A stretch of 64,000 nt of DNA from the IMG/VR virus record IMGVR_UViG_3300034072_000758, positions 124,001 to 188,000 of that record, one strand, 5' to 3'. This document shows, piece after piece, positions 5,804-63,573 of the stretch. The notes beneath the pieces were generated by a model. That model saw only the letters and a program-made list of their open reading frames with translations. It had not been told where the DNA came from and did no database searches. How positions within the stretch are numbered: position 1 is the stretch's first letter; the number at the start of each line of letters is the position of its first letter. The translations under genes were made by a program, and so were the position numbers.

Positions 5804-6148
5804 ATGACCGAAGAAGATAAAATCGTCTGGAATGAATTTGTTCAAAATATGAACAAATATGCTCCAACTGTTTCGTATTTCCCACCAGTTAAGCGCGCTT
5901 ATCGTTTGGACCTTCATGGTATGACGGTCGATAGCGCTCACAAGACTACTATCGACTTCATTGAAAAGTCTAAGGTGTCTGGTTTAAAGCATATCACGAT
6001 TGTGACCGGCCTCAGCGGAAACATCAAGAAAGAGTTTCCGTACTGGCTGGAACGCAATCCACATATTGCTAAGATCGAGCAAAAAAGCGGTGGTGGAGCC
6101 TACAAGCTTTATCTGAAAAAGAATCAGGCTAACAGCAGTAGAAGATAG
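5804..6148 (+). CDS. Smr/MutS2 C-terminal domain protein
   Basis: RLDLHGMTVDSAH...ITIVTG...GGGAY are Smr motifs; N-terminal EEDKIVW resembles alphaproteobacterial Smr proteins. Confidence 0.85.
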   Translation: MTEEDKIVWNEFVQNMNKYAPTVSYFPPVKRAYRLDLHGMTVDSAHKTTIDFIEKSKVSGLKHITIVTGLSGNIKKEFPYWLERNPHIAKIEQKSGGGAYKLYLKKNQANSSRR

Positions 6149-6462
6149 ATCGCATCTTCGGCTTGCTGTTTATGAAATAACCGATACCAACCTTGGATAA
6201 TATCGGCCCCTTCTCGGCGTCTATACTCAGGCCGAATGTGATATTTGAAATACAAAGTTTCACCTTCGACAGTAATAAGTATATCGCCGCTTTGATATGT
6301 TTCACTTCTGACTTTAAATGACATACCATTTATCTCAGTGTTCCATATACTTACGGACCCACTGTTATAAGACACGCTGTAAATAGGACACATCTTTTGG
6401 CTATTCAAAAAGATTGAATAGTGAGGGACGTTCCTTTCAACAATAGGCCGCTTAAGAAGCAT
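6124..6462 (-). CDS. Hypothetical protein with C-terminal acidic-hydrophobic motif
   Basis: Ends QQAEDAIYLLLLLA*. Confidence 0.65.
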   Translation of the reverse strand: MLLKRPIVERNVPHYSIFLNSQKMCPIYSVSYNSGSVSIWNTEINGMSFKVRSETYQSGDILITVEGETLYFKYHIRPEYRRREGADIIQGWYRLFHKQQAEDAIYLLLLLA

Positions 6463-6466
6463 AACC

Positions 6467-6931
6467 TTACCAGTAGTGATTGAACAGATAGAACTTGAAG
6501 TTGCCGCGCTTCAAGATTTCGGGATAGTCCGCGAATATCTCGTTGATCTTTTCCCAGATGCCTTCGGGATCGGGGAGACTTTTCGGATCAAGATGTACGG
6601 GATCGTCAGTGTCATTGATGACTTTGAGCCATCCGAGATAGTAATCATCTTCGCCATAATTACTCAAGACGCCTTCCCAGCCGTTCGGAAGTTTGATCCC
6701 ATTTAGCTCGCCATCTTCGTGGACGAACTCGCCAAACAAGTTGCGAAATTCATCCCACCGAGGACGAGACGCAGTTTGTGTAACTGCGACCTTCTTACCG
6801 CAATGTGGACAGAACTTAGCAGTCTCGTCTTTTTCGCATTCGCAGGATTTGACGGAAATGATTTCCTTCGGGAAAGAGCCGATTCCGAACTTGAGTGCGA
6901 AACCAGCATGAACGTATCTCGAAGTACCCAT
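6467..6931 (-). CDS. Zinc-ribbon-containing hypothetical protein
   Basis: CECEKDETAKFCPHCG; AAGGA SD upstream. Confidence 0.7.
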   Translation of the reverse strand: MGTSRYVHAGFALKFGIGSFPKEIISVKSCECEKDETAKFCPHCGKKVAVTQTASRPRWDEFRNLFGEFVHEDGELNGIKLPNGWEGVLSNYGEDDYYLGWLKVINDTDDPVHLDPKSLPDPEGIWEKINEIFADYPEILKRGNFKFYLFNHYW

Positions 6932-6973
6932 TGTTTATCCTTTGTGCTTTCGAAGCACCATACAACAAATGGC

Positions 6974-7294
6974 TTATACCGCAAGCATCAATTTGATTAG
7001 CACTTCATCTGGATCAACATTATCCGGCGTCGTTACGATCACCTTATGTAAATATCTCAGTCTGATAGGATCGGCATTAGGGATGTATGGGTCAGAATCT
7101 CGAACGCCACGAAAAGTAAATCTAAGTTCAATACCATCGCCCTTGATAAAAATATCCCCGCCGCGCGCCATACCGGTTCTAAATTTATATTCAGTGATTT
7201 CAAAATAGTCTGGTTGCTTCCACAATTCATTGAGCTTGTAAGCAAAATTATACAATTCATCATTATGGCCGTTGGTTTCATATTCTTTGATCAT
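6974..7294 (-). CDS. Hypothetical protein with C-terminal motif
   Basis: Ends VDPDEVLIKLMLAV*; ATGA-coupled to the upstream gene. Confidence 0.7.
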   Translation of the reverse strand: MIKEYETNGHNDELYNFAYKLNELWKQPDYFEITEYKFRTGMARGGDIFIKGDGIELRFTFRGVRDSDPYIPNADPIRLRYLHKVIVTTPDNVDPDEVLIKLMLAV

Positions 7295-8037
7295 CGGGTT
7301 TCAAATCGCAAACGCAGATAGGTTTGAACTTCATCGTCCTCGGCGACATGAGCACAAAACATGAGGGCGATGGGGTGAGAAATATCGCGGTAAATACGAG
7401 ACACGACATCATTTGTTATGAACTTGCGGTTCACATGAATAATTAAGTTGGGATCGATGTCAATGATATACCCCAGCATATTTTCTGGGACCACATCGAA
7501 ACAGTGCGCTCGACCTTTGTTTAATAAAAATTTGATTGTTCTTTTCCAAAATCGATCTGGAAAAACTAAACCACGTTTACTCGCCTCATATATGTAACTC
7601 CAAGCGTCATTCTTGACTATCATGTAATACATTAAAGCGGGAGTAATTTTATCCTTCATATTATCAAAGAAAAAAACATCGTCTTCTCGGAAATTATAAT
7701 CCTTCATTCTATCAATACAGGCCAGCAGCGCAGCACGACATGGATTTTTTATGTATTCTATCGCATAACCATTGTATGAATTTTCAATTGCTATCAATTG
7801 TAATTCGGGAGACGGGTCTTCAACATAAGCGATAAATTTAGGCGAGACTTCACCAACCAATTTTTTGATTAATTCATAATCGGTTGTTTTCGATAATCGC
7901 TCAAGAACAATACGCTCATATTCAAATCGCCAATTGCCATCATACTTATCTTGGTTTCTCCCAAGATAGTCCTCTGTTTCTTTGATGATTTTAACAACTT
8001 GTGCTGGCTCAAGCCCATCGAAATCTATGCGAAACAT
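7291..8037 (-). CDS. Helical-repeat (DUF4116-like) protein with C-terminal motif
   Basis: YVEDPSPELQLIAIE / AIEYIKNPCRAALLACI repeats; ends EDDEVQTYLRLRFETR*. Confidence 0.65.
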   Translation of the reverse strand: MFRIDFDGLEPAQVVKIIKETEDYLGRNQDKYDGNWRFEYERIVLERLSKTTDYELIKKLVGEVSPKFIAYVEDPSPELQLIAIENSYNGYAIEYIKNPCRAALLACIDRMKDYNFREDDVFFFDNMKDKITPALMYYMIVKNDAWSYIYEASKRGLVFPDRFWKRTIKFLLNKGRAHCFDVVPENMLGYIIDIDPNLIIHVNRKFITNDVVSRIYRDISHPIALMFCAHVAEDDEVQTYLRLRFETR

Positions 8038-10429: not shown

Positions 10430-10792
10430 TTATTCCACTCCCATCACAAGCATGGTGACATGAAGATCGACATCTGAGTCAGATAAAAGCTCATGCCGCT
10501 TCTGAACGCGAATAATACCACCCGGTAATTCGGTGATGGACACATGTGATGATACGATACCTACCAAAATTGGTAGGTAACAGTTCTCATAACGATACGA
10601 GAAGAAGTATTCAATACCAAAAATTTCTACACGATGAATAAGCAATCTATTGCTGAAATATATTGTCTCTTTCTTCGGTATTTTTTTGCGGCCCGTACCA
10701 GTATACCCATAGTGTTTGAAGAAGAAGGCATCAACTTCTTCTTTTCTATATTGTGTAAATTTCAGCCAAATTCGTTCGTCATATAAATTCAT
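10430..10792 (-). CDS. Hypothetical protein with C-terminal motif
   Basis: Ends SDSDVDLHVTMLVMGVE*. Confidence 0.6.
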   Translation of the reverse strand: MNLYDERIWLKFTQYRKEEVDAFFFKHYGYTGTGRKKIPKKETIYFSNRLLIHRVEIFGIEYFFSYRYENCYLPILVGIVSSHVSITELPGGIIRVQKRHELLSDSDVDLHVTMLVMGVE

Positions 10793-11205
10793 AACTGATC
10801 CGAAAGTAATACAATTGACATCATATCACTTTCTACGGTCTCAAGGGAAATATTATCTACAAGCTCGTCAATATAAAACATGAGCGTATTTGAGAATAGA
10901 CCTCGGCTCACCCAAGTAAATATCCAGTCGGGTGAGTAAATCTTGAACAACTCAGTGGTACGTTTACTGTTATCGGATTCCCACTTCCAAATCAATTCAA
11001 AGTTATACGGAACACCGTTGATGTAACGATACTCATATGAATGACTATCGTAATCACCTTTCAATTTATATGAAAAGTTTTTGCGCCCGTGCTCTACACA
11101 AAAATCCTCTAAAGTCTCGTCAACATAGTAATTTGTTGTCAAATTATCTTTGATCTTGTGGACGAACTTCCACATATCACTATTCTGATCGAGACTATAG
11201 AGCAT
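10789..11205 (-). CDS. Hypothetical protein with C-terminal motif
   Basis: Ends LETVESDMMSIVLLSDQL*. Confidence 0.65.
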   Translation of the reverse strand: MLYSLDQNSDMWKFVHKIKDNLTTNYYVDETLEDFCVEHGRKNFSYKLKGDYDSHSYEYRYINGVPYNFELIWKWESDNSKRTTELFKIYSPDWIFTWVSRGLFSNTLMFYIDELVDNISLETVESDMMSIVLLSDQL

Positions 11206-29650: not shown

Positions 29651-29901
29651 GATAAAACCAACATAGCTTTCATAAGCACTTCATCCAGACGCTCCGACGA
29701 AGCGTTCGACATATATTTCACATTTTTGTCGCAACCGAATGGCTCAATAATAACTTCCTCATAACGAAGACGATGAAGAACAGCCGAAAAAGAGTCCCAA
29801 GTAAAATCCCCAGCTTCAAAAGTTGGCCAACGTTTCCTAGTCAATTTATCTAATTGTTCCCAGACCTCGCGCGGCACTTCGCTGTGATAGGTTGGTCTCA
29901 T
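29647..29901 (-). CDS. C-terminal-motif protein
   Basis: Ends ERLDEVLMKAMLVLS*. Confidence 0.7.
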   Translation of the reverse strand: MRPTYHSEVPREVWEQLDKLTRKRWPTFEAGDFTWDSFSAVLHRLRYEEVIIEPFGCDKNVKYMSNASSERLDEVLMKAMLVLS

Positions 29902-46911: not shown

Positions 46912-47243
46912 TCCCAGCTTTGATGAAAACGAACTTTTGGGCGAGCCTGTGGAAAAATGCCGCCGCCACAAGTCATCCCACCCAGAAGATAGTAAATACG
47001 CCTTACGGAGACGTTACGGTTCAGTTTTGTTACGGATCGGTGAGCGCGGTCCACGAAGCGTTCTCGTACCGTGGGCGGGTGCGTACAGCCGTTGATGATA
47101 GTGAACATGTTGAGGTGTTCTGGACAGAAACCGCTTCGAACAAATACGAGCCGGACATCTGGAATATGGCCTCAAAGATTTTTGACAAAGAGGTTGCCGA
47201 AAACGTGATCACCATCCTTGTTCTTAAATATGTCCCAGAGTAA
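46908..47243 (+). CDS. C-terminal-motif protein (DxxFW subfamily)
   Basis: KTNFW; ends KEVAENVITILVLKYVPE*. Confidence 0.68.
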   Translation: MIPALMKTNFWASLWKNAAATSHPTQKIVNTPYGDVTVQFCYGSVSAVHEAFSYRGRVRTAVDDSEHVEVFWTETASNKYEPDIWNMASKIFDKEVAENVITILVLKYVPE

Positions 47244-47679
47244 GCCGTCATATTATACCACTAAATTCTGGTCGGACGTTTTGATAGCGTCCGAGCAAAC
47301 GACCACGCCGTTTAATGGCAAACAACATCAATCCGTGGCAACGTATCTCGATCTTACCATCACGATCACTTTCCCCATCGTGACAAATAAAAGCCCGATC
47401 CCCATAATCCATTTTAGAGTTAAGAAGGCCGGAAAATACCTGATCAAATTCAAATTGACCCGTAAGCGTGATTTACCCAATCTTATACTGGATAGTCGTG
47501 GTAGGGTTCTTAAAAGCAAGAACCGCGTTACTACAACATTGTTACCGATTAAAAACAGCTTCATTCGCAAGCCGGTCGGTCTGACGGTCGAGGATTTCAA
47601 ATTTAAACTCTATAAAAAAATGACTTTTGAACAGTTTGAAGACGATTTGACCCTCCTTAAGCTATTGACCAGCCAGTGA
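47230..47679 (+). CDS. C-terminal-motif protein (DxxFW subfamily)
   Basis: TTKFW; ends TFEQFEDDLTLLKLLTSQ*. Confidence 0.7.
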   Translation: MSQSKPSYYTTKFWSDVLIASEQTTTPFNGKQHQSVATYLDLTITITFPIVTNKSPIPIIHFRVKKAGKYLIKFKLTRKRDLPNLILDSRGRVLKSKNRVTTTLLPIKNSFIRKPVGLTVEDFKFKLYKKMTFEQFEDDLTLLKLLTSQ

Positions 47680-47719: not shown

Positions 47720-48148
47720 GTGAAGTATCTTACCGATTTGTCTTTTTGGTCGAAAATTATTGATGGTTGTAATGAACCGTCTCCGAATCCCTATAAAAAT
47801 CCATATGGTAAGAATCCTCCCGTAAAACGAAGTGATAAAAATAACCTTCGGGTGAGTTTCAAGATTTACGGAACCGTTGGTAAGCATCTTGGTTCGGTAA
47901 CTGTTACTATACATCTTCTAGGTAAGTTCAAGTTAGTCTTACATACTAAAAATGAATTAGATACCACTCGATATTTTTCCCGTGGCGAGCAAGCCATTAT
48001 TCCGAAAAACCACACCCCAATATACGTATACGATGATGCTTTCATTATCGCCTACACCAAAGTTGAAACGCACAAATTGACTTTGATGCGAAATATGACT
48101 ATAGAAAAATTCGAAGACGAAGTTCTTAGACTATCGCTGGCCTTATGA
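47720..48148 (+). CDS. C-terminal-motif protein (DxxFW subfamily)
   Basis: TDLSFW; ends TIEKFEDEVLRLSLAL*. Confidence 0.7.
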   Translation: MKYLTDLSFWSKIIDGCNEPSPNPYKNPYGKNPPVKRSDKNNLRVSFKIYGTVGKHLGSVTVTIHLLGKFKLVLHTKNELDTTRYFSRGEQAIIPKNHTPIYVYDDAFIIAYTKVETHKLTLMRNMTIEKFEDEVLRLSLAL

Positions 48149-48477
48149 TCATCACCGACGAACACAAAATCCGACAATTTATCAAAATGATATGGGCCGA
48201 AATTGGCGCTCAATATGATGATGATGAATATGAACCAGATGGCGACTCTATTTATTATTTAGATATGGGTGGTAAAAAGCTAACGATCTTAACTACAGCT
48301 ATTAACACTCAAAAAGGTGGTACACGAGATTGTGTCACAAACGTCATTTGTGATGATTTTTGTCTGGTGTTCAAACCCGCAATTCACCACGGTGATGTTG
48401 TTCAGCGGTCGATGCTCGTACTAAGCAATGATCAGGCGGAAGAACTAACAAAGTTTATGCTCATGATAGGAGACTGA
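48145..48477 (+). CDS. C-terminal-motif protein
   Basis: Ends DQAEELTKFMLMIGD*; paralog of 49853-50227. Confidence 0.68.
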   Translation: MIITDEHKIRQFIKMIWAEIGAQYDDDEYEPDGDSIYYLDMGGKKLTILTTAINTQKGGTRDCVTNVICDDFCLVFKPAIHHGDVVQRSMLVLSNDQAEELTKFMLMIGD

Positions 48478-48479: not shown

Positions 48480-48899
48480 GTGACACATCCCGCGATGATG
48501 GGTTATAACTACTCTTCGAAAGAGTATGACAATCTCGGTTTATGGATGGATATTGTCAACTTCACTAAACCTGACACTAAAACCCCAGCGCGCGTGTTGG
48601 GCGATACGTATTTCCATGTTCAGTGGGGAATGTCCAATGGATATTCTAATGTGTTCTACTTGGACATTATAAACCCATTTTTTTCAGCCGCGATTATGGG
48701 GACGCTGTATAAAGAACCAAAGCGCATACAATTTGCTGAGGACGAACCTGAACTGGTGTGGTGCGAAAACAAGAGACTGTCTGTCAGCTACCCGTACTAT
48801 ATAAAAGACGACCGATGCGATTTCAGCGTCAATCCTCTTAAATCAACTTGGGATGAAGTTGATTCGGCGATCATGGCTTTACGATTGTTGGCGAGTTAA
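48480..48899 (+). CDS. C-terminal-motif protein (DxxFW subfamily)
   Basis: DNLGLW; ends TWDEVDSAIMALRLLAS*. Confidence 0.7.
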   Translation: MTHPAMMGYNYSSKEYDNLGLWMDIVNFTKPDTKTPARVLGDTYFHVQWGMSNGYSNVFYLDIINPFFSAAIMGTLYKEPKRIQFAEDEPELVWCENKRLSVSYPYYIKDDRCDFSVNPLKSTWDEVDSAIMALRLLAS

Positions 48900-49490: not shown

Positions 49491-49838
49491 ATGGAAGCGA
49501 TTTATTTTGATTACTTTCCACACAAACTCCGCGACTACATGTGGGGAAAGTCTATTAAAAGAGAACAGAAAGTGCGGTATTGGACACGCACGGGATACCG
49601 ATGGAACAATAAACCGCAAGTATGGGTTTTTACTCAAGGTGAACACACTGTTAATCTATACGTAGAGGATCGCGCGTCGATCCCCGATTTCAAAATATTA
49701 CGTAAGGCAAACATATACAAAATTTGGGGACGGCTTGCGGATGGGAGCGTTGGTGAAATCATGAAAGTGGAACTTATTGGTAAGACCACCAAGGAAGAAG
49801 TTGAAGAAATTCTTACCTTGATTTCTCTCAGTATGTAA
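49491..49838 (+). CDS. C-terminal-motif protein
   Basis: Ends TKEEVEEILTLISLSM*. Confidence 0.7.
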   Translation: MEAIYFDYFPHKLRDYMWGKSIKREQKVRYWTRTGYRWNNKPQVWVFTQGEHTVNLYVEDRASIPDFKILRKANIYKIWGRLADGSVGEIMKVELIGKTTKEEVEEILTLISLSM

Positions 49839-49852: not shown

Positions 49853-50227
49853 ATGGCCGAAGATAATATGCGCATTACTGATCCACATAAGTTGGCTGAT
49901 CTATATCAGTTCTTCTTGAAGAAAATTGAGGGACGCCTCGGTTTGCCGTCTTCTGCCAACAACATTATTCAGGGTGATCGATCCACCAGAGTCGTTGGCT
50001 TCGTGGTCAAAGACGGCTTCTACAAGTTCAATGCTTCTCTTGTGAGACTTTCCTATGAAATGCGACACTTCTGCCTAATCACCAATGTCGTGTGTAATCA
50101 ATTCGCAATCATCTTCGACATAGGTTTCGTGACCGACAATTTTGAGGTGACCGGAGCAACCATCATTGCTCGCGGCGACGGTGAGGACTTCATGAAGTTT
50201 ATGCTTGAAAAGAATGACATCACATGA
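49853..50227 (+). CDS. C-terminal-motif protein
   Basis: ITDPHK and TNVVC shared with 48145; ends GDGEDFMKFMLEKNDIT*. Confidence 0.65.
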   Translation: MAEDNMRITDPHKLADLYQFFLKKIEGRLGLPSSANNIIQGDRSTRVVGFVVKDGFYKFNASLVRLSYEMRHFCLITNVVCNQFAIIFDIGFVTDNFEVTGATIIARGDGEDFMKFMLEKNDIT

Positions 50228-50550
50228 GACGCAACGATGTGGTCTTTTGCCATTCTGGGGCGACACGCGACCCTCCACACTTTTCGCCGTATGGGCGGAT
50301 AGTAAAGAGAGTCGGCGATAAGTTCGAAGTTATCTTCTGTAACGGAGAGCGTTGGACGCTGGCGGAAGATGACCTGACTATCCATTACTATGGCGGGCGG
50401 ATCGATACGAAAACCAACTGGCATCCGACTAAGATCAGGCCCTTGAAAGAATGGCAGATCGTCGTTCGATTCCCAACACTCCGTAAGCTGAAAGCCATAG
50501 CTGCGCGGTATGAACGGGCTTATGGTAAGAAGAACATGTTTGATGAATGA
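50224..50550 (+). CDS. Hypothetical protein
   Basis: ATGA-coupled, 108 aa. Confidence 0.6.
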   Translation: MRRNDVVFCHSGATRDPPHFSPYGRIVKRVGDKFEVIFCNGERWTLAEDDLTIHYYGGRIDTKTNWHPTKIRPLKEWQIVVRFPTLRKLKAIAARYERAYGKKNMFDE

Positions 50551-50914
50551 TTGGAAAATTTGGGTTCAAATAATCAATAATATGCGGTGGGCTACTTACG
50601 GAAGTAAGTGGCTTAAAACACCTTATGAGTTTATGTATGCAAGTGTTTTCTTTGTGGGTGGCGGAGAAAATATGCTCTATACTTATCGCATCGTCATCAC
50701 TCTTAAATCTAAATTCAAGATAGAATTAACATTTAATTTTCGATTGGACCCATTTTCTACCTTGGAGTTTGATGTTAGGTCTAATGAGGAAGCCCCGTAT
50801 CGTATTGATCCTAGCACCATGACTATGACCGCGCGTCAATATGCGCCCACAATCATCACTCAAGATGAAATGGATGAAATCTTGATAGTCCTAACTCTGA
50901 CTGCTTTCGAGTAA
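50543..50914 (+). CDS. C-terminal-motif protein (DxxFW subfamily)
   Basis: MNDWKIW; ends TQDEMDEILIVLTLTAFE*. Confidence 0.7.
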   Translation: MNDWKIWVQIINNMRWATYGSKWLKTPYEFMYASVFFVGGGENMLYTYRIVITLKSKFKIELTFNFRLDPFSTLEFDVRSNEEAPYRIDPSTMTMTARQYAPTIITQDEMDEILIVLTLTAFE

Positions 50915-50917: not shown

Positions 50918-51334
50918 ATGAAATTGGAAGCTGAAATTTGGGTGAAACTTATAAACACCCTCAATTGGCACGGTAATAACCGTTTCAAGCGCCGCTGGTG
51001 CTCGCAGGGTGTTTGGGAGGCGTATATAATACCTGCTGGTAGCTTCAATAAACGAAAGGGTACATTGTTTCGGGTCGTGATAAGATATATAAGTCTTGAC
51101 CTCGCCACCGAGTATTTCAAGAGCGAAAAAATGTTTGGGGTAACACCATTAAAAGGCCATTCCCCATACGAAGCGTTGTTCGATATTGATTACCAAGAAC
51201 CTCCAATTAAATATAGCACCAAGAGATTGGAGTTCCGCGACGGTTGGACAAAAACATCAATGACCAAAGATGAAATCGAAGAAGCAATAGTGGCTTTCTT
51301 CTTGACACTGGACCCTTATACGTATAACTCTTAA
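50918..51334 (+). CDS. C-terminal-motif protein (DxxFW subfamily)
   Basis: EAEIW; TKDEIEEAIVAFFLTL. Confidence 0.7.
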   Translation: MKLEAEIWVKLINTLNWHGNNRFKRRWCSQGVWEAYIIPAGSFNKRKGTLFRVVIRYISLDLATEYFKSEKMFGVTPLKGHSPYEALFDIDYQEPPIKYSTKRLEFRDGWTKTSMTKDEIEEAIVAFFLTLDPYTYNS

Positions 51335-52593: not shown

Positions 52594-52892
52594 GCATCGA
52601 AGAATATATCGCACGAACCAATAGCGATTGGGCCAATGAGGGTAGCGGATACCAGATGTATCGAGTCTGGTACTCGCGCCGCGCTGGCCACAAAGAGTTC
52701 ATGTTCCAAGGTGGGAAATCTCAAGCGGAAGCTGAGGATTTAGCGCAGGATCATTTCGACAATCGGGATGAACATAACCGCCAGCATCATGGTCATGCCA
52801 AGGTTATTCGCACAACGCCCGTGGCCAAGTCTGTGGATGCTCAGGCACCAAAGGCGACATTCGGTGACTGGTTACGTAACCTGTTCCGCTAG
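52590..52892 (+). CDS. Hypothetical protein
   Basis: ATGA-coupled to thrS. Confidence 0.6.
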   Translation: MSIEEYIARTNSDWANEGSGYQMYRVWYSRRAGHKEFMFQGGKSQAEAEDLAQDHFDNRDEHNRQHHGHAKVIRTTPVAKSVDAQAPKATFGDWLRNLFR

Positions 52893-53242
52893 ATCGTTAG
52901 CGCCAGCTTTATTAACATTTCGTCCATAGCTTCCTGATCGTTCGTGTGGTATTCAAGAAGCTTTAGGCTTGTGAACGAGACCATAAAACCGTTACCCGTA
53001 TGTATTGTGTAGAATGGCTCCGGTTGCATTACATATGCCGGGGTCATTTCTATTTTAGCAGATAATAAACTATGCTCTATTTCAAGCATATTTCTGCGTT
53101 TCTCCATAGTAATCGTAATTTTATATTCACCGATATTATATATTGCGGGCGTTATTCCAGCATCATTGCTCCCCATCCATTGCGTATGATCCGCGTCAGA
53201 AACAAGCTTTAGAATGAATTGGGGATTTTCGAGGATATTCAT
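52889..53242 (-). CDS. C-terminal-motif protein
   Basis: Ends DQEAMDEMLIKLALTI*. Confidence 0.7.
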   Translation of the reverse strand: MNILENPQFILKLVSDADHTQWMGSNDAGITPAIYNIGEYKITITMEKRRNMLEIEHSLLSAKIEMTPAYVMQPEPFYTIHTGNGFMVSFTSLKLLEYHTNDQEAMDEMLIKLALTI

Positions 53243-54711: not shown

Positions 54712-55226
54712 TCGTGCCACCGGTAGAAGACGTATTCCATCATCAGCGGAATGATCTAGTTACGCAAATGTATGAAGGTAAAGTTGAGAAGAAAGCCGTA
54801 ATGAGCTTTCTTTTCGACATTATCACGGATATGTATGGTATCATGCGATCCGAAACTGTGCTCCCACCGGAATTTCATCAGGACTACGTTTTTCTCAAAC
54901 TAAATCTCGAACATTATATGAATGATCGGGAAGTTCCCGACGATGTTATTGGTGATCATACTATACCACAAAGGTATGACATGTATGGTCTTCATATGCT
55001 CATATACATTATGACTAAGTTCCAAAAAACACTTAGAGGTGAACATATGTTATTCACCAGTTCTAGCCAATCATTCTTTCGTTTGATCCCTTCGTTCTTT
55101 ACTTACATAAAGCATCGAGGTCAGGACAATTTTAAGATCGATGACATATTGACATCGCGGGTAATGTTGTATTACGATAACGTAAGCAAGTTTCGTTTCG
55201 GATACCCATTAAGGCCCACGAATTGA
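54708..55226 (+). CDS. Hypothetical protein
   Basis: Coupled 172-aa ORF. Confidence 0.6.
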   Translation: MIVPPVEDVFHHQRNDLVTQMYEGKVEKKAVMSFLFDIITDMYGIMRSETVLPPEFHQDYVFLKLNLEHYMNDREVPDDVIGDHTIPQRYDMYGLHMLIYIMTKFQKTLRGEHMLFTSSSQSFFRLIPSFFTYIKHRGQDNFKIDDILTSRVMLYYDNVSKFRFGYPLRPTN

Positions 55227-55642
55227 AAATCGAACAACTCAAAGCTCTGATCTACAAGACACCAATCAACAGGCGCAATCGGGTAACCCCCGATACATTC
55301 ATGGTGTCCACTGATGAATACCAAGTATTCTTGCGCTTGGTACGAAAGCCCGATGGGCTAATCGCCGAAGTCGCGCTCGCAACGAAGACCCTTCATATCA
55401 AATCTCAGATGTCGATCTTCGAGCTACCGGGTGGGGATGTTCTCGAAGCCGCAGATGCACCCAATCGTTTTCCGGTAGCCATCGGCGCTGCGAACAGGAT
55501 GGTATTGAAAGGCGTCGAGCCATCTACGTTTAAGGTTGTCGATTGCCGCGCCCTACGCCAAACCAAAGATGGCGCGCAAAGCTATATCGACCCCGAAGAA
55601 GTCGAGAACGAGCTTATGCTTCTCGTCCTCATGGAACTGTAA
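55223..55642 (+). CDS. C-terminal-motif protein
   Basis: Ends DPEEVENELMLLVLMEL*. Confidence 0.7.
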   Translation: MKIEQLKALIYKTPINRRNRVTPDTFMVSTDEYQVFLRLVRKPDGLIAEVALATKTLHIKSQMSIFELPGGDVLEAADAPNRFPVAIGAANRMVLKGVEPSTFKVVDCRALRQTKDGAQSYIDPEEVENELMLLVLMEL

Positions 55643-56037
55643 TGAACCCAGAATTATTTAAAAAACTAATTGAGCAAGCTACCATCATTGGGTCAAGATA
55701 CGGTTTCATCGCGTCCACCAATGATTATACGATACATGTCAATTCAGCCGACTGGACTAATAAAATCACAGTTCAGCTTCAAACGAATGTCAGTGGCGAT
55801 TTGATCGTCGTTCACGGGTCCGTGCTACGATCCGGCAACGTGACGGGAATGGAGTTTCCAACACACTACTTTTATGTTGATAACAAAATGGCGGTCTCAT
55901 ATGATCCAATCTCTCCCGACTATGGGTTTGCCATATCGGATGCCGTGATCTACTATAATTGTGATTCAAATAATTTCACCAAAGATCGTGATATAATCGG
56001 TGATCATCTGGCGATGCTGATCATCAACCATTTATAA
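55642..56037 (+). CDS. C-terminal-motif protein
   Basis: Ends DRDIIGDHLAMLIINHL*. Confidence 0.62.
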   Translation: MNPELFKKLIEQATIIGSRYGFIASTNDYTIHVNSADWTNKITVQLQTNVSGDLIVVHGSVLRSGNVTGMEFPTHYFYVDNKMAVSYDPISPDYGFAISDAVIYYNCDSNNFTKDRDIIGDHLAMLIINHL

Positions 56038-56079: not shown

Positions 56080-56574
56080 ATGTCCAGTGATTACATGTTT
56101 GACAAACTTGATGTGTGGTTGGCGCTTTTAGCCAAAGCCAAACCCGTTAGTTCCCAGATAGAAACTCTTGCCGATAAGCGTTTACGCATTCGGTATAAGT
56201 ATCTACCTGACGAGAAGCTGTCGATCCTCGTCCGCGAACCTATCTTCAAATACAAGACCTACCGCAACGGTGGCTTCATCGATTATGAACGATTTCGATA
56301 TTGGGTTGAAAATCCCGGTCGGCCTATGCCCCGTGAAGGTTTCTATGATTTCCTTCATCACCCGATGGAAGTGGTATTCAAGTATCGAAACACTTTTCAG
56401 TTCACGATCAAATTCCAAGCTTGTAAGGGTCGGGCTGCCTTTCCGGTAAGAACGGTTTTAGACAATGGTGAATACCATATGTCCTACTGTATGGAGCAAT
56501 CCCTTCGCCCTATTCGTAAATCGTCTCAAGAAAAAATTGATGAAGCCATGATGCGATTGGCGTTGACGCTATGA
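56080..56574 (+). CDS. C-terminal-motif protein (DxxFW subfamily)
   Basis: DKLDVW; ends SQEKIDEAMMRLALTL*. Confidence 0.7.
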   Translation: MSSDYMFDKLDVWLALLAKAKPVSSQIETLADKRLRIRYKYLPDEKLSILVREPIFKYKTYRNGGFIDYERFRYWVENPGRPMPREGFYDFLHHPMEVVFKYRNTFQFTIKFQACKGRAAFPVRTVLDNGEYHMSYCMEQSLRPIRKSSQEKIDEAMMRLALTL

Positions 56575-56945
56575 GAATCCAAGATGATGTTCAATTCTGG
56601 GCTGCGCTGTGTCATACATGCGATAAATTTGTTGTGCCTTATCCTGTGTCGGTGAAAGGTGTATCGAGATATTGGCCAGTCGAATATCATCATACCGAGC
56701 TACCACTTTCATTTTATATTTTATATAATGTTTCAAAACCCGGCATCATTCGAGTAATATATAAGCACAAATTCATGTGCGTTATGAAAGTACGATTTGG
56801 TGAGGTTCCGTTCACCTTAAACCGCCATGAAGCTGTTGATCTTGAGGACGTATTTCATACAAAAATAAAGCCGTTACGCGGGACTTCTATTGAAGAAGTG
56901 GAAGATATATTGGTTAACCTTCGTTTGTCTGTTGACCTTGTGTAA
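56571..56945 (+). CDS. C-terminal-motif protein (DxxFW subfamily)
   Basis: MRIQDDVQFW; ends SIEEVEDILVNLRLSVDLV*. Confidence 0.72.
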   Translation: MRIQDDVQFWAALCHTCDKFVVPYPVSVKGVSRYWPVEYHHTELPLSFYILYNVSKPGIIRVIYKHKFMCVMKVRFGEVPFTLNRHEAVDLEDVFHTKIKPLRGTSIEEVEDILVNLRLSVDLV

Positions 56946-57663: not shown

Positions 57664-57944
57664 TGGGTAAGTCTCGTAAAACCAACGTCATGAACGCGGT
57701 CTTTAATGGACGTGAGGGCGATCTCAAGGGCGCTGAAAAAGCGACGTTTGATCGCATGTTCACCAAGATCGACAACGGCGCAAAGCTGTCAGCGGCGACC
57801 GAGGTGAAGGACTTCGATTTCAATGGCGATTTCGGCGCTGGGTTCCGTCATGGGAATAAGCGTAAAGCTATGGCCGCGATGAAAGTCCTCAAGCGCAAAT
57901 CAGATCGCGCCAAGGGCAAGAAGGTCGATTTAAGCGGCGACTAA
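57663..57944 (+). CDS. Small basic protein
   Basis: TAATG-coupled; Lys-rich. Confidence 0.7.
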   Translation: MGKSRKTNVMNAVFNGREGDLKGAEKATFDRMFTKIDNGAKLSAATEVKDFDFNGDFGAGFRHGNKRKAMAAMKVLKRKSDRAKGKKVDLSGD

Positions 57945-58316
57945 CAATATGTTGGTCAGGATGTCTTCAACTTCTTCCCGACGATCAACGTTCGGACGAC
58001 CTTCGATATATGATCCCGATAACATCCAGACAACACCCGTCTCCATCGTAAATTTCATGACAATATATTTGTGGTGATATTTGGGATCATCAATTAGAGT
58101 GAATTTGAAGCCGGAAATATACACGCCCGCTTCGTCTTCTATCTTGACGATACAATGGCTGGCGTTAAACTCGCTCATACTATTTGTCGCGGCAAGTGAT
58201 ATTTTACCCATTGGCGAAATGATCTCGGCCACGGAGACACCATCGTTGATGTCAAACTTCGTCGTGTAACGATTGAACAGATCGATCCAAAAGTTCATAT
58301 GATCGTATTTCATCAC
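57930..58316 (-). CDS. C-terminal-motif protein (DxxFW subfamily)
   Basis: DHMNFW; ends REEVEDILTNILLVAA*. Confidence 0.72.
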   Translation of the reverse strand: MMKYDHMNFWIDLFNRYTTKFDINDGVSVAEIISPMGKISLAATNSMSEFNASHCIVKIEDEAGVYISGFKFTLIDDPKYHHKYIVMKFTMETGVVWMLSGSYIEGRPNVDRREEVEDILTNILLVAA

Positions 58317-60877: not shown

Positions 60878-61255
60878 CTATAGCGAAAGCCACAATTTCA
60901 TTAATGCTTCATCCGGGTCTGTCCCATCATGCGTTGATACGCGAACGTATTGGTATTTTACACGATCCAAAATTCCATCCAAAATTTCACTTGGCTTCAA
61001 ATCACTCTCACATGAGGTTTTTGGTGCTACGTTTATTTCGAAATAAAAATCAACACGGTCATCAGATAAAGGCTGGCCGTGGTGAACCGACCAAATGAAA
61101 ATCACACCATCAACAATTTTGGTTATGATGGCAAAATCATACGGGCCGATTTTTAAACGCTTCGTTTCATATTCCGCTTTATACATCAGCGCCCAAGCAA
61201 GGTCATTAGCCTTGTCTGGATAGTATTTCACTTTTTTGCGCTCTAAAAAGTTCAT
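60878..61255 (-). CDS. C-terminal-motif protein
   Basis: Ends TDPDEALMKLWLSL*. Confidence 0.7.
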   Translation of the reverse strand: MNFLERKKVKYYPDKANDLAWALMYKAEYETKRLKIGPYDFAIITKIVDGVIFIWSVHHGQPLSDDRVDFYFEINVAPKTSCESDLKPSEILDGILDRVKYQYVRVSTHDGTDPDEALMKLWLSL

Positions 61256-61578
61256 GACATAAACATGGCCAGAGATATGGCCGCATCATCCAATGATCCG
61301 GCGAAGCCGTCGCTCAACTTGACCCGACCATCTTCGTGGACCGTGGATACGTAATCATGCTTGATGCCGATAACGTACCAACTTTTCCACTCATATTCGT
61401 AAGAAATCGTAGCTGCCGCCGTGGTGTATCTATGTTCCTTGGGCGTGGATACAAGATAGCTTTGAAACGTCACCTTAAGCTCACCGATGATCTTCACCAG
61501 CTTCTCAGGAGATTGTTTATGGATCGGTAAAGCAGCGCGTTTCACAAGCGCAGCACATAGGCTTTGGTAGGGTGTCAT
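61252..61578 (-). CDS. C-terminal-motif protein
   Basis: Ends SLDDAAISLAMFMS*. Confidence 0.65.
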   Translation of the reverse strand: MTPYQSLCAALVKRAALPIHKQSPEKLVKIIGELKVTFQSYLVSTPKEHRYTTAAATISYEYEWKSWYVIGIKHDYVSTVHEDGRVKLSDGFAGSLDDAAISLAMFMS

Positions 61579-61724
61579 TTCTTTTTCTTGTCCTTGCGAT
61601 AAGCCTGATTACCCGGCGCTTTACCCTTCTTATGCGAAGGCGTAGGTTTACCATCGACGCATCGTTGATCCCCAGCACATATGCGGCGATTGTCACACAT
61701 ATCACAGGTCACGAAATCATTCAT
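61575..61724 (-). CDS. Small Cys-rich basic protein (below track cutoff)
   Basis: MNDFVTCDMCDNRRICAGDQRCVDG...KDKKKK*; ATGA overlaps on both sides. Confidence 0.55.
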   Translation of the reverse strand: MNDFVTCDMCDNRRICAGDQRCVDGKPTPSHKKGKAPGNQAYRKDKKKK

Positions 61725-62119
61725 GCGAGCAACTTCATCTGTATGTAAATCTCGTCTGGATCAATTGTCTTGGTGCGAATCGTGGCACCGACACAAACGG
61801 GAGCAAGAAACTTACCATAAGTTTCTCGAAATCCGTGCATATTGAAGCGTTCTTCAATCTTAAGATGATATTCGTATTGGAATTTAATAACGATCTCTCG
61901 ACCATAATTAATCTTGGTAATGACATCATACCATATTGTTTTGTCTTCACCTGTATTCTTCGACGGAAATTCATCTAAGCTTACGCTAAAATCATATCCC
62001 AAAATATCGATATTTGCCCGGTACAGTTTTTCATTAACGAACTTCTTATAATCAAGCTCCTTTTTAGTAATATACTCATGCAGCCAGACAGCCGTATCCC
62101 GATCAAGCTCCTTGAACAT
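61721..62119 (-). CDS. C-terminal-motif protein
   Basis: Ends IDPDEIYIQMKLLA*. Confidence 0.7.
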   Translation of the reverse strand: MFKELDRDTAVWLHEYITKKELDYKKFVNEKLYRANIDILGYDFSVSLDEFPSKNTGEDKTIWYDVITKINYGREIVIKFQYEYHLKIEERFNMHGFRETYGKFLAPVCVGATIRTKTIDPDEIYIQMKLLA

Positions 62120-62224
62120 AAATCACCCGATCAACATAAAGCGCATGGAAAGCATTAGCAGATGGTCCCGCGATGACGGCGCAACCGCTGATCTTCTTAT
62201 AACCATCAACCCAACGTGTATCGA

Positions 62225-62530
62225 TCATGCTGTCAGCGATAAGATCATCACCGCTTCCTCTTCGTCTGTGTTTATGTCAACGCGAGAAATAAACATCTTA
62301 CCACTACCAAAATGAATGATCAATGTGGGTGTGGTGACTTTTATTATCTCATAATTACCTTTACCCTTTAAGCCAATAATGGTCGCAGTACAGAGATCGT
62401 CGCCTATACGAAAATCGATAACTTCTCGTGTTTCTGGTGTCAGCATAATAAGTCCGTACCGTTCGCTCACGCGCCGAACAATTCCATTAGCAATAGGCCA
62501 GTAAGCTGGGTTCGAGCGTTCAAGGATCAT
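62225..62530 (-). CDS. C-terminal-motif protein
   Basis: Ends TDEEEAVMILSLTA*. Confidence 0.7.
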   Translation of the reverse strand: MILERSNPAYWPIANGIVRRVSERYGLIMLTPETREVIDFRIGDDLCTATIIGLKGKGNYEIIKVTTPTLIIHFGSGKMFISRVDINTDEEEAVMILSLTA

Positions 62531-62885
62531 GGCGAGTAATTACCGGCACAGCCTTATCGTCGGGCATATGAAGAGTGAATATCATCAGAGCTTCATCAAG
62601 AGTATATTGCGAGTCACTAAAGTTCACTAAAAAATCGTTAGAAGATATTTCTTCCAGCAAAGAATACACCGAGATCGCTTCGCATTGTAACTCACGGAAA
62701 CGAAGCTTGTTTTCCTTGATGGATACCCGCTCACAAACATAAATTATTTTATATTTACCAATGGTAAAATGAATTTGTGTGCCGGGATGCCAGCCCAATC
62801 CAGTCAATGACAGATGGCTGATAGCGTTCGAAATGGTGTCGATGATTCGCGCACCAAGCTCTCTTGGGACTTCAATACCAATCAT
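62520..62885 (-). CDS. C-terminal-motif protein
   Basis: TLDEALMIFTLHM near the C-terminus. Confidence 0.65.
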   Translation of the reverse strand: MIGIEVPRELGARIIDTISNAISHLSLTGLGWHPGTQIHFTIGKYKIIYVCERVSIKENKLRFRELQCEAISVYSLLEEISSNDFLVNFSDSQYTLDEALMIFTLHMPDDKAVPVITRHDP

Positions 62886-63247
62886 TCGACCACCATCAGT
62901 ATAAGCATCATAGCATCATCCCCGTCATCATACGTGGGATGCCTCATTATAAAATATTCTGTAAAGGGGTCGATTCCAGCCGCTTTATTGATCACTCGTA
63001 TCAAGTGAATGTCACCATATTTTATTTCACGCAGAACCCAGCGACCGCGTATTGGTTCTTCTTTAAAGGGGTTATCATCTGGGAAAAATTGAAATGTCGA
63101 AATAAAACGTCCGGTTTCAAGCGTGACTTGCTGGCCATGTTCTTTCGAGCGCATCATGTCCATGCGCGCCTTACCCTCAATCGTAATGTTCTTCCGAACA
63201 TACGAAAGCACCATATCATGATATTCTTCTTCGATGTAGTAGGTCAT
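62882..63247 (-). CDS. C-terminal-motif protein
   Basis: Ends DDGDDAMMLILMVVE*. Confidence 0.7.
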   Translation of the reverse strand: MTYYIEEEYHDMVLSYVRKNITIEGKARMDMMRSKEHGQQVTLETGRFISTFQFFPDDNPFKEEPIRGRWVLREIKYGDIHLIRVINKAAGIDPFTEYFIMRHPTYDDGDDAMMLILMVVE

Positions 63248-63573
63248 TTATATTTCAAAAGGAATGTCGTAAACTCGGTATCAATTTCAGTGGTACGGTC
63301 TTTAGGGTTTCGATGACTCACCTTAACCGAACTGACCTTACTCTTATCCCACTCAAATTCGAAACGCAGGGCCTCATAGAGAACTTCTTTAATGAAACTA
63401 CCAACCGAAGTATTGATCATTGTGATTTCGATGTCGGGGTCAAAATATAGCGTCTCTTCCCCGCGATTCCACTTAGTAGCAACTTCGCTGTCATAATACA
63501 TTTTGTGGAAATAATTGTATATTTCTGCGCTCTTAGGCGAGTTATAACAAAGGGAAACGATAAACTCATTCAT
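63244..63573 (-). CDS. C-terminal-motif protein
   Basis: Ends TEIDTEFTTFLLKYK*. Confidence 0.65.
   Translation of the reverse strand: MNEFIVSLCYNSPKSAEIYNYFHKMYYDSEVATKWNRGEETLYFDPDIEITMINTSVGSFIKEVLYEALRFEFEWDKSKVSSVKVSHRNPKDRTTEIDTEFTTFLLKYK

What the first reader, a model, noticed from the sequence alone, without database searches (positions are those of the whole stretch)
6124..63573. About 55-58 divergent small proteins share one C-terminal acidic-hydrophobic helix: a candidate docking/targeting-tag system
Seen: most hypothetical ORFs in 27.3-63.6 kb, plus five at 6-11 kb, have unrelated-looking bodies (mostly 85-260 aa) but end in the same pattern, usually within 0-6 residues of the stop. 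The pattern is an acidic patch followed by h-h-x-h-x-L. Examples: NEVDEILMRIALSLS*, EQFENDMIVFRLVLQ*, AEIDEDLMLLRLAFAS*, AQFEEDMMSLRLLN*, EEIEEFLLTAKLTI*, EQFEDDLTLLKLLTSQ*, EKFEDEVLRLSLAL*, DEVDSAIMALRLLAS*, EEVEEILTLISLSM*, EAMDEMLIKLALTI*, EEVENELMLLVLMEL*, EKIDEAMMRLALTL*, DPDEALMKLWLSL*, DEEEAVMILSLTA*. It occurs on both strands, in ATGA/TAATG-coupled arrays, and on soluble, TM-anchored and larger repeat proteins. The recognisable enzymes and structural genes in between lack it. None of these genes has the TAAATA-N5-ATG late signature, while TTGAC-type promoters head several arrays, pointing to early expression. Inference: a variable N-terminal recognition module plus a constant C-terminal helix that docks on one common partner (a host AAA+ protease/chaperone, an RNA polymerase, a phage-encoded hub or a compartment import machine). 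This is conceptually like poxvirus PRANC/F-box adaptors and would give the phage a large anti-defence or host-takeover repertoire. Alternative: one fold expanded and diverged until only its terminal helix is recognisable. I do not recognise the motif as a described family.
Basis: partly seen in the sequence, partly recalled or inferred. Interest (0 to 1): 0.93.

Follow-up and report, generated by a model that had tools for sequence, protein, structure and literature searches.

The report
Expanded small-protein family, conserved end helix
About one gene in seven of this 517-kb phage belongs to a single, fast-diverging, undescribed family of small proteins that keeps only its last helix recognisable, and related giant phages carry their own versions (up to ~270 copies), so it is a huge viral multigene family, not a portable tag on unrelated proteins.

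Summary
A 13-residue pattern, x-E-h-[DE]-[DE]-x-L-M-x-L-x-L-x, preceded by an S/T/D/N helix cap, ends 80-111 proteins of this 516,805-bp phage; shuffles give 0.1-4.5. In the window 41-42 are strong and about 12 are weak. Selection acts on the protein: third codon positions carry no information.

The "portable docking tag on unrelated bodies" reading is not favoured. The helix follows a beta-strand through a 3-4-residue turn, with no linker. AlphaFold2, run on two disjoint paralog alignments, gives the same plan both times: a 5-7-strand antiparallel sheet plus a confident C-terminal helix. One subfamily shares a ~50-residue C-terminal module with two related 0.56-0.58-Mb phages. A sister family ending ..F.[ST]EEDA..FKLKW has ~250-277 copies in one relative, 39 matches in the cultured Sinorhizobium phage Phosso, 52 in another relative and at least 6 in this genome. 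Two-domain relatives carry the helix internally.

Best reading: a lineage-specific, tandemly expanded multigene family whose terminal helix is the core of one small alpha+beta domain. It lacks the presumed late-gene signature and probably serves host interaction.

A shared partner for the helix, such as the phage's own ClpP/ClpX, is not excluded. Pfam, PHROGs, NCBIfam, PADLOC and PDB give no significant match.

The parts
6124..6324 (-). family member, weak (66 aa as called; 9.9 bits)
6974..7294 (-). family member (106 aa, 11.8 bits)
   Evidence: phmmer link to 60878-61255
10430..10792 (-). weak look-alike (120 aa), below 6 bits
   Evidence: C-terminus seen
10789..11205 (-). family member (138 aa, 20.2 bits)
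27458..27916 (+). sub1-type member with a 13-residue extension after the helix (152 aa)
   Evidence: 55.9 bits to the sub1 C-terminal HMM
27913..28668 (+). sub1-type member (251 aa, 20.9 bits)
29297..29650 (-). family member (117 aa, 23.7 bits)
29647..29901 (-). family member (84 aa, 18.8 bits)
29898..30251 (-). family member (117 aa, 10.4 bits)
31894..32256 (+). weak look-alike heading the + strand array (120 aa)
   Evidence: promoter-like site at 31838-31866
32256..32897 (+). sub1-type member with N-terminal TM segment (213 aa)
32914..33210 (+). sub1-type member (98 aa)
33210..33722 (+). sub1-type member with N-terminal TM segment (170 aa)
33719..34120 (+). family member (133 aa, 18.6 bits)
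34120..34638 (+). sub1-type member with N-terminal TM segment (172 aa)
34646..35011 (+). family member (121 aa, 12.7 bits)
35336..35734 (+). family member (132 aa, 18.8 bits)
36617..36850 (+). family member (77 aa as called, 20.3 bits)
36847..37248 (+). family member (133 aa, 22.4 bits)
37245..37652 (+). family member (135 aa, 26.2 bits)
37652..38071 (+). family member (139 aa, 10.5 bits)
38064..38843 (+). sub1-type member (259 aa)
38824..39210 (-). sub1-type member (128 aa, 25.4 bits)
39207..39524 (-). sub1-type member (105 aa, 20.9 bits)
43110..43397 (+). weak look-alike (95 aa)
43907..44308 (+). sub1-type member (133 aa, 26.5 bits). AlphaFold2 model 1: strands 60-117, helix 119-132.
44308..44769 (+). 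weak member (153 aa)
   Evidence: A2 HMM E 0.09
45404..45793 (+). weak look-alike (129 aa)
45781..46143 (+). family member (120 aa, 21.5 bits)
46140..46508 (+). family member (122 aa, 11.4 bits)
46489..46911 (+). family member (140 aa, 16.6 bits)
46908..47243 (+). family member (111 aa, 9.7 bits)
47230..47679 (+). family member (149 aa, 27.2 bits); paralog of its neighbour 47720-48148
47720..48148 (+). family member (142 aa, 20.3 bits)
48145..48477 (+). family member, weak (110 aa, 7.7 bits)
48480..48899 (+). family member (139 aa, 20.9 bits)
49491..49838 (+). family member (115 aa, 24.1 bits). AlphaFold2 model 2: strands 43-96, helix 101-114.
49853..50227 (+). weak look-alike (124 aa)
50543..50914 (+). 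family member (123 aa, 21.9 bits)
50918..51334 (+). family member with an 8-residue tail (138 aa, 17.3 bits)
52889..53242 (-). family member (117 aa, 21.9 bits)
55223..55642 (+). family member (139 aa, 26.8 bits)
55642..56037 (+). weak look-alike (131 aa)
56080..56574 (+). family member (164 aa, 27.8 bits)
56784..56945 (+). family member (53 aa as called, 22.9 bits)
57930..58313 (-). family member (127 aa, 22.5 bits)
60878..61255 (-). family member (125 aa, 22.7 bits)
61252..61578 (-). weak look-alike (108 aa)
61721..62119 (-). weak look-alike (132 aa)
62225..62446 (-). family member (73 aa as called, 19.7 bits)
62520..62885 (-). member whose helix lies 15 residues before the stop (121 aa, 18.7 bits)
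   Evidence: listed as internal
62882..63247 (-). family member (121 aa, 17.3 bits)
63244..63573 (-). family member (109 aa, 10.6 bits)

Best explanation
The ORFs are members of one very large, tandemly duplicated, fast-diverging multigene family of small, mostly soluble proteins (median about 123 aa). The family makes up about 13-14% of this phage's genes.

The shared C-terminal pattern is the last beta-strand, a tight turn and the N-capped terminal alpha-helix of one small alpha+beta domain: an antiparallel sheet of 5-7 strands covered by the helix. The single helix supplies much of the hydrophobic core, so it stays recognisable. The strands only need an alternating hydrophobic pattern, and they and the loops have drifted beyond sequence detection.

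The family is old in this clade of 0.46-0.58-Mb Atu_ph07/Phosso-like phages, and each lineage has expanded its own variant. This genome has the acidic EE-h-[DE][DE]-x-LM-x-L-x-L form. G002 has the ..F.[ST]EEDA..FKLKW form, in about 250-277 copies. Phosso has ..AM.FKL...

Shown: the enrichment, protein-level selection, clustering in arrays, absence from late-signature genes, and presence of the sub1-type and FKL-type families in relatives.

Inferred: the common fold of all members, and descent of the acidic majority from the clade-wide family.

Inferred with less confidence (about 0.4): the proteins are non-structural and made before the late genes. The variable sheet and loops recognise diverse host or competitor targets (host takeover, counter-defence), and the constant helix holds the fold together, possibly also forming a shared oligomerisation or partner surface.
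For: Enrichment and cross-validation.

Protein-level selection.

Arrays at genome positions 140-245 kb, with the detectable paralog pairs mostly adjacent.

No linker. Hydrophobicity alternates at positions -11 to -5, Gly is common at -3 and the S/T/D/N cap sits at -2.

Bodies are compositionally distinct and beta-prone (F, Y, H, I up; A, Q, E down; p = 2e-11).

Two AlphaFold2 models from disjoint alignments share one plan. Model 1 has strands 60-117 and helix 119-132, with pLDDT 83-90. Model 2 has strands 43-96 and helix 101-114, with pLDDT 78-85.

Sub1 shares a module of about 50 residues (W strand, loop, Y.G, hF.G[DN], helix) with G001 (11-13 genes) and G002 (HMM E = 1e-4).

The sister FKL-type family: 277 of 964 genes in G002 (shuffles 0.1), 39 matches in Phosso, 52 in G003, 9 in G001, 6 in G000 and 1 in Atu_ph07.

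Bridging C-termini occur in G000.

Profile-profile register is E.Dm..mkL against eEda..FKL.

Two-domain relatives carry an internal copy of the helix.

The FKL-type profile finds 641 cluster representatives at E <= 0.001, and all 10 looked up are unnamed or 'hypothetical protein'.

None of the 50 genes with the TAAATA-N4-5-ATG signature, which include the 782-aa baseplate protein, is a member.
Against: Body-level homology is not demonstrable by sequence. phmmer links only 2 of 79 bodies. The sub1 body HMM does not separate other members from non-members (p = 0.046). hhalign aligns only the helix, with P between 3e-4 and 0.12.

The AlphaFold2 models are of moderate quality (mean pLDDT 60-62, N-terminal 40-60 residues unmodelled) and rest on paralog-only alignments. 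I could not inspect coordinates to confirm that the helix is buried.

The most conserved positions lie on two helix faces (3, 7, 10, 14 against 1, 4, 5, 8, 12). The acidic pair at positions 4-5 is 95% conserved here but absent in Phosso. This hints at a constraint beyond folding.

The helix is almost always within 1-3 residues of the stop.

Function and timing are inferred, not measured: no RNA data were found.
Confidence: 0.68

Rival explanations
1. Docking tag. The helix is a transferable short motif that brings about 100 different recognition modules to one hub, such as RNA polymerase, a chaperone or a phage-encoded hub.
For: Conservation is extremely asymmetric: the helix carries about 2 bits per position while the bodies are unalignable. 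Conserved residues lie on two faces of the helix, and the acidic patch is shared by all subfamilies of this genome but not by Phosso. The helix is nearly always at the extreme C-terminus.
Against: There is no linker, and a strand and tight turn precede the helix. The helix has high pLDDT in monomer models, whereas an unpartnered docking motif would be expected to score low. It is never attached to a recognisable domain. Paralogy links neighbours. Sister families have the same small size and build. Relatives carry internal copies.
Confidence: 0.15
2. Degradation or timing signal. The C-terminal helix is recognised by the phage's own Clp machinery, so that the whole set of proteins is removed at a set time in infection.
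For: The genome encodes a strong ClpP (255 bits), a ClpX-like AAA+ protein and a 759-aa double-AAA+ Clp protein. Relatives are reported to carry several Clp genes (PMC11242549, read). The pattern is C-terminal and ends in hydrophobic residues.
Against: The last 1-3 residues and the tail length are not conserved in this genome, unlike ssrA-type degrons (established knowledge). The segment is predicted to be a packed helix, not a free peptide. Atu_ph07 gave only one family match.
Confidence: 0.07
3. Oligomerisation helix. The second conserved face (positions 1, 4, 5, 8, 12) pairs helices of two subunits, giving homo-oligomers or mixed oligomers of paralogs.
For: Two hydrophobic stripes on opposite faces appear in both the G000 and the G002 variants. 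This is a helical-wheel inference.
Against: There is no direct evidence. The models are monomeric, and promiscuous mixing of about 100 paralogs seems costly.
Confidence: 0.08
4. Artefact: compositional chance, a conserved DNA/RNA element at gene ends, or spurious ORFs.
For: None after testing.
Against: Enrichment is 25-800-fold over shuffles, and there is none at internal positions. Third codon positions carry no information and all six Leu codons are used. There are no matches in most relatives with the same HMM.
Confidence: 0.01

Closest known systems
Lineage-specific expansions / multigene families of large viruses. Examples: the ~35-copy Zn-ribbon family of Bacillus phage G (PMC7824862, read); ASFV MGF and poxvirus host-range families (own knowledge).
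   Same: Many paralogs lie in tandem arrays. Copy number differs between related genomes. Divergence is fast around a small conserved core. Function is presumed accessory or host-interaction.
   Different: The scale is larger: about 100 copies here and about 250-277 in relative G002 (26-29% of its called genes). The domain has no match in Pfam, PHROGs or NCBIfam. The conserved part is a single terminal helix.
   Same: A variable N-terminal part with a constant C-terminal element, in many copies in a large virus.
   Different: PRANC is a separable three-helix F-box-like domain on recognisable ankyrin repeats that binds Skp1. Here there is no PRANC, F-box or ankyrin match. There is no linker, and the helix appears to be part of the same small domain as the body.
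PH-like folds, especially the Ran-binding domain and EVH1/WH1 last strand plus C-terminal helix
   Same: The G002-type consensus yvleFeseEdaalFKLKWk aligns with LAIRFKTPEEAALFKCKFE of Nup358 RanBD1. The general plan of a beta sheet closed by a C-terminal amphipathic helix with an [ST]xEE cap matches. PF23076 PH_FT_C gives weak hits in 2 of 70 members.
Influenza NS1 effector domain and Mog1/PsbP-like folds (DcrB, PA94, SciW, and the T6SS/T4SS immunity proteins TplEi and Smlt3025)
   Different: All scores lie in the range the tool calls middling, there is no sequence signal, and model 1 gives no such hit.
C-terminal degrons (ssrA-type) recognised by ClpX/ClpA
   Same: C-terminal position and hydrophobic ending. 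The phage encodes ClpP, a ClpX-like protein and a ClpA/B-like protein.
   Different: Degrons are unstructured and depend on the last 2-3 residues. Here the end residues vary, and the segment is a predicted packed helix.

Membership tests
Viral multigene family / lineage-specific expansion | Many paralogs sharing a conserved core motif, far above chance | tested here: met
   80-111 members against 0.1-4.5 expected; cross-validated.
Viral multigene family / lineage-specific expansion | Tandem arrays, with the closest paralogs adjacent | tested here: met
   Members cluster at genome positions 140-245 kb. The phmmer-linked pairs are mostly neighbours.
Viral multigene family / lineage-specific expansion | Copy number and variant differ between related genomes | tested here: met
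   A2 HMM: 54 matches in the own genome, 0-1 in relatives. A8 HMM: G002 ~277 genes (PSSM), G003 52, Phosso 39, G001 9, G000 6, Atu_ph07 1.
Viral multigene family / lineage-specific expansion | All members share one fold (common descent) | tested here: inconclusive
   Two AlphaFold2 models from disjoint alignments have the same plan, and body composition is shifted. No body-level sequence link was found.
PRANC / F-box adaptor proteins | C-terminal F-box-like domain detectable by profile | tested here: not met
   No Pfam match in 34 members.
PRANC / F-box adaptor proteins | Recognisable N-terminal repeat module (ankyrin) separable from the C-terminal element | tested here: not met
   No Pfam, PHROGs or NCBIfam domain in the bodies. 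No linker before the helix.
Short linear docking motif / C-terminal degron (ssrA-like) | Motif lies in a flexible, unstructured tail | tested here: not met
   A strand and tight turn lie directly upstream. The helix has pLDDT 79-90 in monomer models. These are predictions only.
Short linear docking motif / C-terminal degron (ssrA-like) | Last 2-3 residues and the free carboxylate conserved | tested here: not met
   In G000 the tail is 0-8 residues long and its residues vary. Two-domain relatives have the helix internally.
Short linear docking motif / C-terminal degron (ssrA-like) | Transferable: the peptide alone confers binding or degradation | not testable with these tools
   Needs fusion experiments.
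PH-like fold, Ran-binding domain / WH1 | Match to the family profile (Pfam Ran_BP1 PF00638, WH1 PF00568) | tested here: not met
   No match in G000, G001, G002, G003 or Phosso. Only a marginal reverse hit, E = 0.025.
PH-like fold, Ran-binding domain / WH1 | Seven-strand beta sandwich closed by a C-terminal helix, shown by structural similarity | tested here: inconclusive
Mog1/PsbP-like and NS1-effector-like alpha/beta folds | Structural similarity well above background | tested here: inconclusive

The most novel reading that the evidence does not exclude
The terminal helix is both the fold's core and a shared handle. Its second conserved face (E1, [DE]4, [DE]5, M8, L12) would dock about 100 diversified binders onto one phage-specific partner, for example the phage's own ClpX/ClpA-ClpP. 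That would form a phage-encoded, programmable adaptor repertoire that delivers many host or rival proteins to one machine. Each phage lineage would co-evolve its own helix variant with its partner.
Probability: 0.15. Interest if true: 0.88.

Novelty: new variant of a known kind. Interest (0 to 1): 0.62.

Why it matters
Most genes of giant phages have no known function. Here a single undescribed family accounts for about 14% of the genes of one 517-kb phage. A sister family accounts for 26-29% of the called genes of a 561-kb relative. Part of phage 'gigantism' in this clade is therefore explained by runaway tandem expansion of one small domain.

Expansions of this kind in eukaryotic large DNA viruses mark arms-race genes (own knowledge). 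The family is thus a prime candidate for a counter-defence or host-manipulation repertoire.

The sister family is present in a cultured phage, Sinorhizobium phage Phosso, with 39 matches all annotated 'hypothetical protein'. The question can therefore be tested at the bench.

Tried and rejected
DNA-level element at gene ends: rejected, because third codon positions are uninformative.

Chance or composition: rejected.

Known families: Pfam, PHROGs, NCBIfam and PADLOC scans of 34-70 members gave nothing at E <= 0.001.

Homologs of window members elsewhere:
- The word-indexed search of 5.8 billion proteins returned only this genome's own proteins.
- tblastn of one member against 50,697 phage records found nothing.
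- The ESM Atlas gave no usable hit. Its own model of the member at 56080-56574 has pLDDT 0.38.

Close sister genomes: a single-protein scan of IMG/VR with the baseplate protein found none. The alignment scan found relatives only at 45% identity or less.

Fold assignment: Foldseek (PDB, AFDB clusters, BFVD), VIA-align and the Atlas shape search gave no significant match for either model.

RanBD/WH1 membership: rejected at profile level.

Sigma-70-type promoters at array heads: not above shuffles.

RNA evidence: no RNA run holds the region. Only low-coverage DNA contigs of the same strain and of a ~93-95% identical strain were found.

False lead: P0013, an 876-aa hit with 7 matched stretches. 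By eye (no profile check was run) it is a different repeat sharing only a W-C-containing stretch.

Literature: no description of the family in the jumbo-phage comparative paper, the Atu_ph07 or AP-J-162 papers, or a 2026 huge-phage preprint.

Full report
**Context**

The window is bases 124,001-188,000 of a 516,805-bp IMG/VR phage record with direct terminal repeats, judged 100% complete. GC content is 45% and the standard genetic code fits.

The window encodes a gp5/VgrG-type baseplate spike with a cell-wall hydrolase domain, a radical SAM protein, two aminoacyl-tRNA synthetases and a tRNA-Arg.

The 782-aa baseplate protein is 25-28% identical to proteins of Agrobacterium phage Atu_ph07 and Sinorhizobium phage Phosso. 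It is 39-45% identical to proteins of two IMG/VR phages of 578 kb (G001) and 561 kb (G002). Runs holding the sequence come from subsurface and soil metagenomes.

I called 795 genes with a simple codon-score caller. The C-terminal analysis does not depend on the choice of start codon.

A PSSM built from them and iterated over whole proteins converged on 86-87 hits, 79-80 of them within 8 residues of the stop. Shuffles give 0.1-0.5 C-terminal hits.
- At 6 bits or more there are 111 C-terminal hits against 4.5 expected. Mid-protein control segments give 2 of 675.
- Training outside the window and testing inside gives 41 hits against 0.7. The reverse direction gives 57 against 0.8.
- An untrained regex gives 92 C-terminal hits against 2.4, while internal hits are at chance.
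- Third codon positions carry almost no information, and the near-invariant Leu uses all six codons. The signal is therefore protein-level selection.
- The window holds 42 members at 6 bits or more, plus about a dozen weaker ones. Most of the rest lie at genome positions 188-245 kb.

**Anatomy of the motif**

The consensus is [ST/DN]-x-E-E-h-[DE]-[DE]-x-L-M-x-L-x-L-x(1-3)-stop.

- Position -2 is S/T/D/N in 64 of 94 members, which is a helix N-cap.
- Gly is common at position -3.
- Positions -11 to -5 alternate between hydrophobic and polar, as in a beta-strand.
- Gly/Pro and disorder-promoting residues are not enriched upstream.

There is thus no linker. The motif is a strand, a tight turn and a terminal helix.

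On a helical wheel (my inference), positions 3, 7, 10, 11 and 14 form one hydrophobic face. Positions 1, 4, 5, 8 and 12 form a second conserved face of mixed acidic and hydrophobic character.

**Bodies**

- With the motif removed, only 2 of 79 bodies hit another member by phmmer.
- With the motif kept, most of the 111 members are singletons. The few clusters are mostly neighbours, for example 47230/47720, the 32914-34638 run, and pairs at genome positions 210 kb and 270 kb.
- The bodies are compositionally distinct from other small proteins of the phage. F, Y, H and I are raised; A, Q and E are lowered. Beta propensity is higher (p = 2e-11).
- Only 6 of 105 have a TM segment. Five of these are in one subfamily.

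**A subfamily with a longer conserved module**

About 14 members, which I call 'sub1', end in Y/F..G[ND]...FE.D.... They share roughly 50 C-terminal residues: a W-containing strand, a variable loop, Y.G, hF.G[DN] and then the helix. Their N-terminal parts vary and include TM anchors.

**Structure predictions**

- Model 1 is a sub1 member (43907-44305) predicted with a 12-row sub1 alignment. It has strands at 60-67, 70-77, 81-86, 90-93, 106-109 and 113-117, and a helix at 119-132. pLDDT is 83-90 over the last 50 residues.
- Model 2 is a non-sub1 member (49491-49835) predicted with a disjoint 58-row alignment. It has strands at 43-49, 52-58, 67-72, 75-81 and 87-96, and a helix at 101-114. pLDDT is 78-85 over the last 45 residues.

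Both models therefore show an antiparallel meander sheet followed by a confident terminal helix. The N-terminal 40-60 residues are unmodelled in both.

**Relatives**

The G000-type HMM (A2) finds 54 matches in the own genome. It finds 0-1 in Atu_ph07, Phosso, G001, G002, G003, G004 and G005. De novo work on the fetched genomes changed the picture.

- G001 (GC 59%) has 11-13 proteins ending h.G[DN].[DE].F..DM.hhK[ML], with the same upstream W strand as sub1.
- A joint profile (A6) finds three matches in G002, the best at E = 1e-4. The best match lies in an array of four genes that all end in this variant.
- Iterating from those four G002 seeds moved onto a much larger G002 family. 277 of 964 called genes, 249 of them at the C-terminus, end in hF.[ST][ED]EDA.hFKLKW[LG]. 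Shuffles give 0.1. Median length is about 90 aa, and the genes form long tandem arrays. Their bodies are again mostly unalignable: 131 of 199 are singletons and one cluster has 42 members.
- A profile of 70 such proteins (A8) finds 39 matches in Phosso, 52 in G003, 9 in G001, 6 in G000 and 1 in Atu_ph07.
- In Phosso the genes are all annotated 'hypothetical protein' and end ..F..K..AM.FKL.h[SGT].
- G000's own A8-type matches include C-termini that bridge the two variants.
- Profile-profile alignment places E.Dm..mkL on eEda..FKL, but it covers only the helix, with P between 3e-4 and 0.12.
- A body-only A8 model scores G000 members slightly above non-members (p = 1.5e-6). Shared composition could explain this.
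- In 1.84 billion representative proteins, A8 finds 641 at E <= 0.001. All 10 that I looked up are unnamed or 'hypothetical protein', and six of them lie on large contigs (47-561 kb).
- Some relatives are two-domain proteins in which the first helix is internal.

I regard the presence of sub1 in three genomes, and of the FKL-type family across the clade, as shown. Descent of the acidic G000 majority from that family is probable but not proven.

**Known-family checks**

Pfam, PHROGs, NCBIfam and PADLOC gave nothing significant.

The A8 profile's best PDB hit is the Ran-binding domain of Nup358 (E = 0.025). The local match between the last strand and C-terminal helix of that PH-like fold and the family consensus is striking. 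PH_FT_C gives weak hits in 2 of 70 members. However, the Ran_BP1 and WH1 profiles find nothing in five genomes. The PH-like fold is a lead, not a membership.

**Expression**

Fifty genes carry TAAATA 4-5 nt before the start codon, among them the 782-aa baseplate protein. None of the 50 is a family member. TAAATA lies within 60 nt upstream of 3 of 111 members against 116 of 684 other genes.

By analogy with the T4 late promoter TATAAATA (established knowledge), and given the late sigma factor annotated in Atu_ph07, the family is probably not late. Sigma-70-like sites are not enriched. No RNA run was found.

**Interpretation**

The data argue against a portable tag on unrelated folds. They do not exclude an extra role for the helix. 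Three points hint at a shared surface: conservation on two helix faces, the genome-specific acidic patch, and the near-obligatory terminal position. The phage encodes ClpP, a ClpX-like protein and a ClpA/B-like protein that could be partners.

I put about 0.7 on the paralog-fold model. About 0.15 goes to a true docking handle, 0.07 to a degron and 0.08 to an oligomerisation role for the second face. The functional guess, a host-interaction or counter-defence repertoire made before late genes, rests on analogy with multigene families of other large viruses and on the missing late signature.

**Caveats**

- The gene caller is home-made.
- The PSSMs were trained on the data they describe, which is why cross-validation and an untrained regex were added.
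- The AlphaFold2 alignments contain paralogs only.
- The G002 and G001 counts depend on my thresholds.
- The genome search match counts are HMM matches at E <= 1 per genome.

Noticed in passing
Genome-wide. In the window: upstream of 15021-15527(-), 18551-19441(-), 21341-23689(-), 23728-24033(-), 25146-26084(-) and 26534-27310(-): Fifty genes (median 223 aa, including the 782-aa baseplate protein) have TAAATA exactly 4-5 nt before the start codon and no Shine-Dalgarno sequence. This looks like a T4-late-type promoter giving leaderless or near-leaderless mRNAs.
   Followed up: partly
G002 (loci L119-L147), e.g. L137 and L138 (360-400 kb), L125 (120-140 kb), L119 (0-20 kb): A 561-kb relative devotes 249-277 of its 964 called genes to one family of ~90-aa proteins ending ..F.[ST]EEDA..FKLKW[LG]. 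They lie in arrays of dozens of back-to-back genes. A 171-kb Logan contig shows the same layout.
   Followed up: partly
G000:C1:28960-29496(+), 501248-502495(-), ~362-364 kb(+) (outside the window): The phage encodes its own ClpP (255 bits), a ClpX-like 415-aa AAA+ protein and a 759-aa double-AAA+ Clp protein.
   Followed up: partly
window 30232-31752(-), 51361-52593(+), 8471-8545(-): There is a class I aminoacyl-tRNA synthetase (Ile/Leu/Val/Met type; 506 aa, possibly lacking its N-terminal part). There is also a class II synthetase with an HGTP anticodon-binding domain (410 aa) and a tRNA-Arg(TCT).
   Followed up: no
window 11205-12569(-), 25146-26084(-), 8978-10006(+): A radical SAM protein (454 aa), a weak ART-PolyVal ADP-ribosyltransferase match (312 aa, below cut-off) and a weak Xre-like HTH match (342 aa).
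   Followed up: no
window 48759-48803 and 48943-48968: A ~93-95% identical strain seen as low-coverage contigs in three other runs (one a wastewater metagenome) shows clustered substitutions. It also has paired +1/-1 indels just upstream of the helix of gene 48480-48899, that is, a locally shifted reading frame that is restored before the motif.
   Followed up: no
G000 genome positions 57082, 90981, 106280, 141152 (= window 17152-17619), 219888-226277, 255156-260914, 278552, 498670: Another paralog cluster of 13 genes, not carrying the motif, and a second of 7 genes, were found by phmmer. Their function was not examined.
   Followed up: no
L148 (Phosso 6500-14500); L115:30-347: The cultured Sinorhizobium phage Phosso has arrays of ~90-110-aa 'hypothetical protein' genes ending ..AM.FKL.h[SGT]. 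This offers an experimental system for the family.
   Followed up: partly
P0013 (876 aa, on a 356-kb ENA contig): This hit to the A8 profile, with 7 matched stretches, is by eye a different repeat protein (repeats containing F.DWCA.HGG.LPK...ERSLA.W). It shares only a short W-C-containing stretch with the family. No profile check was run.
   Followed up: partly
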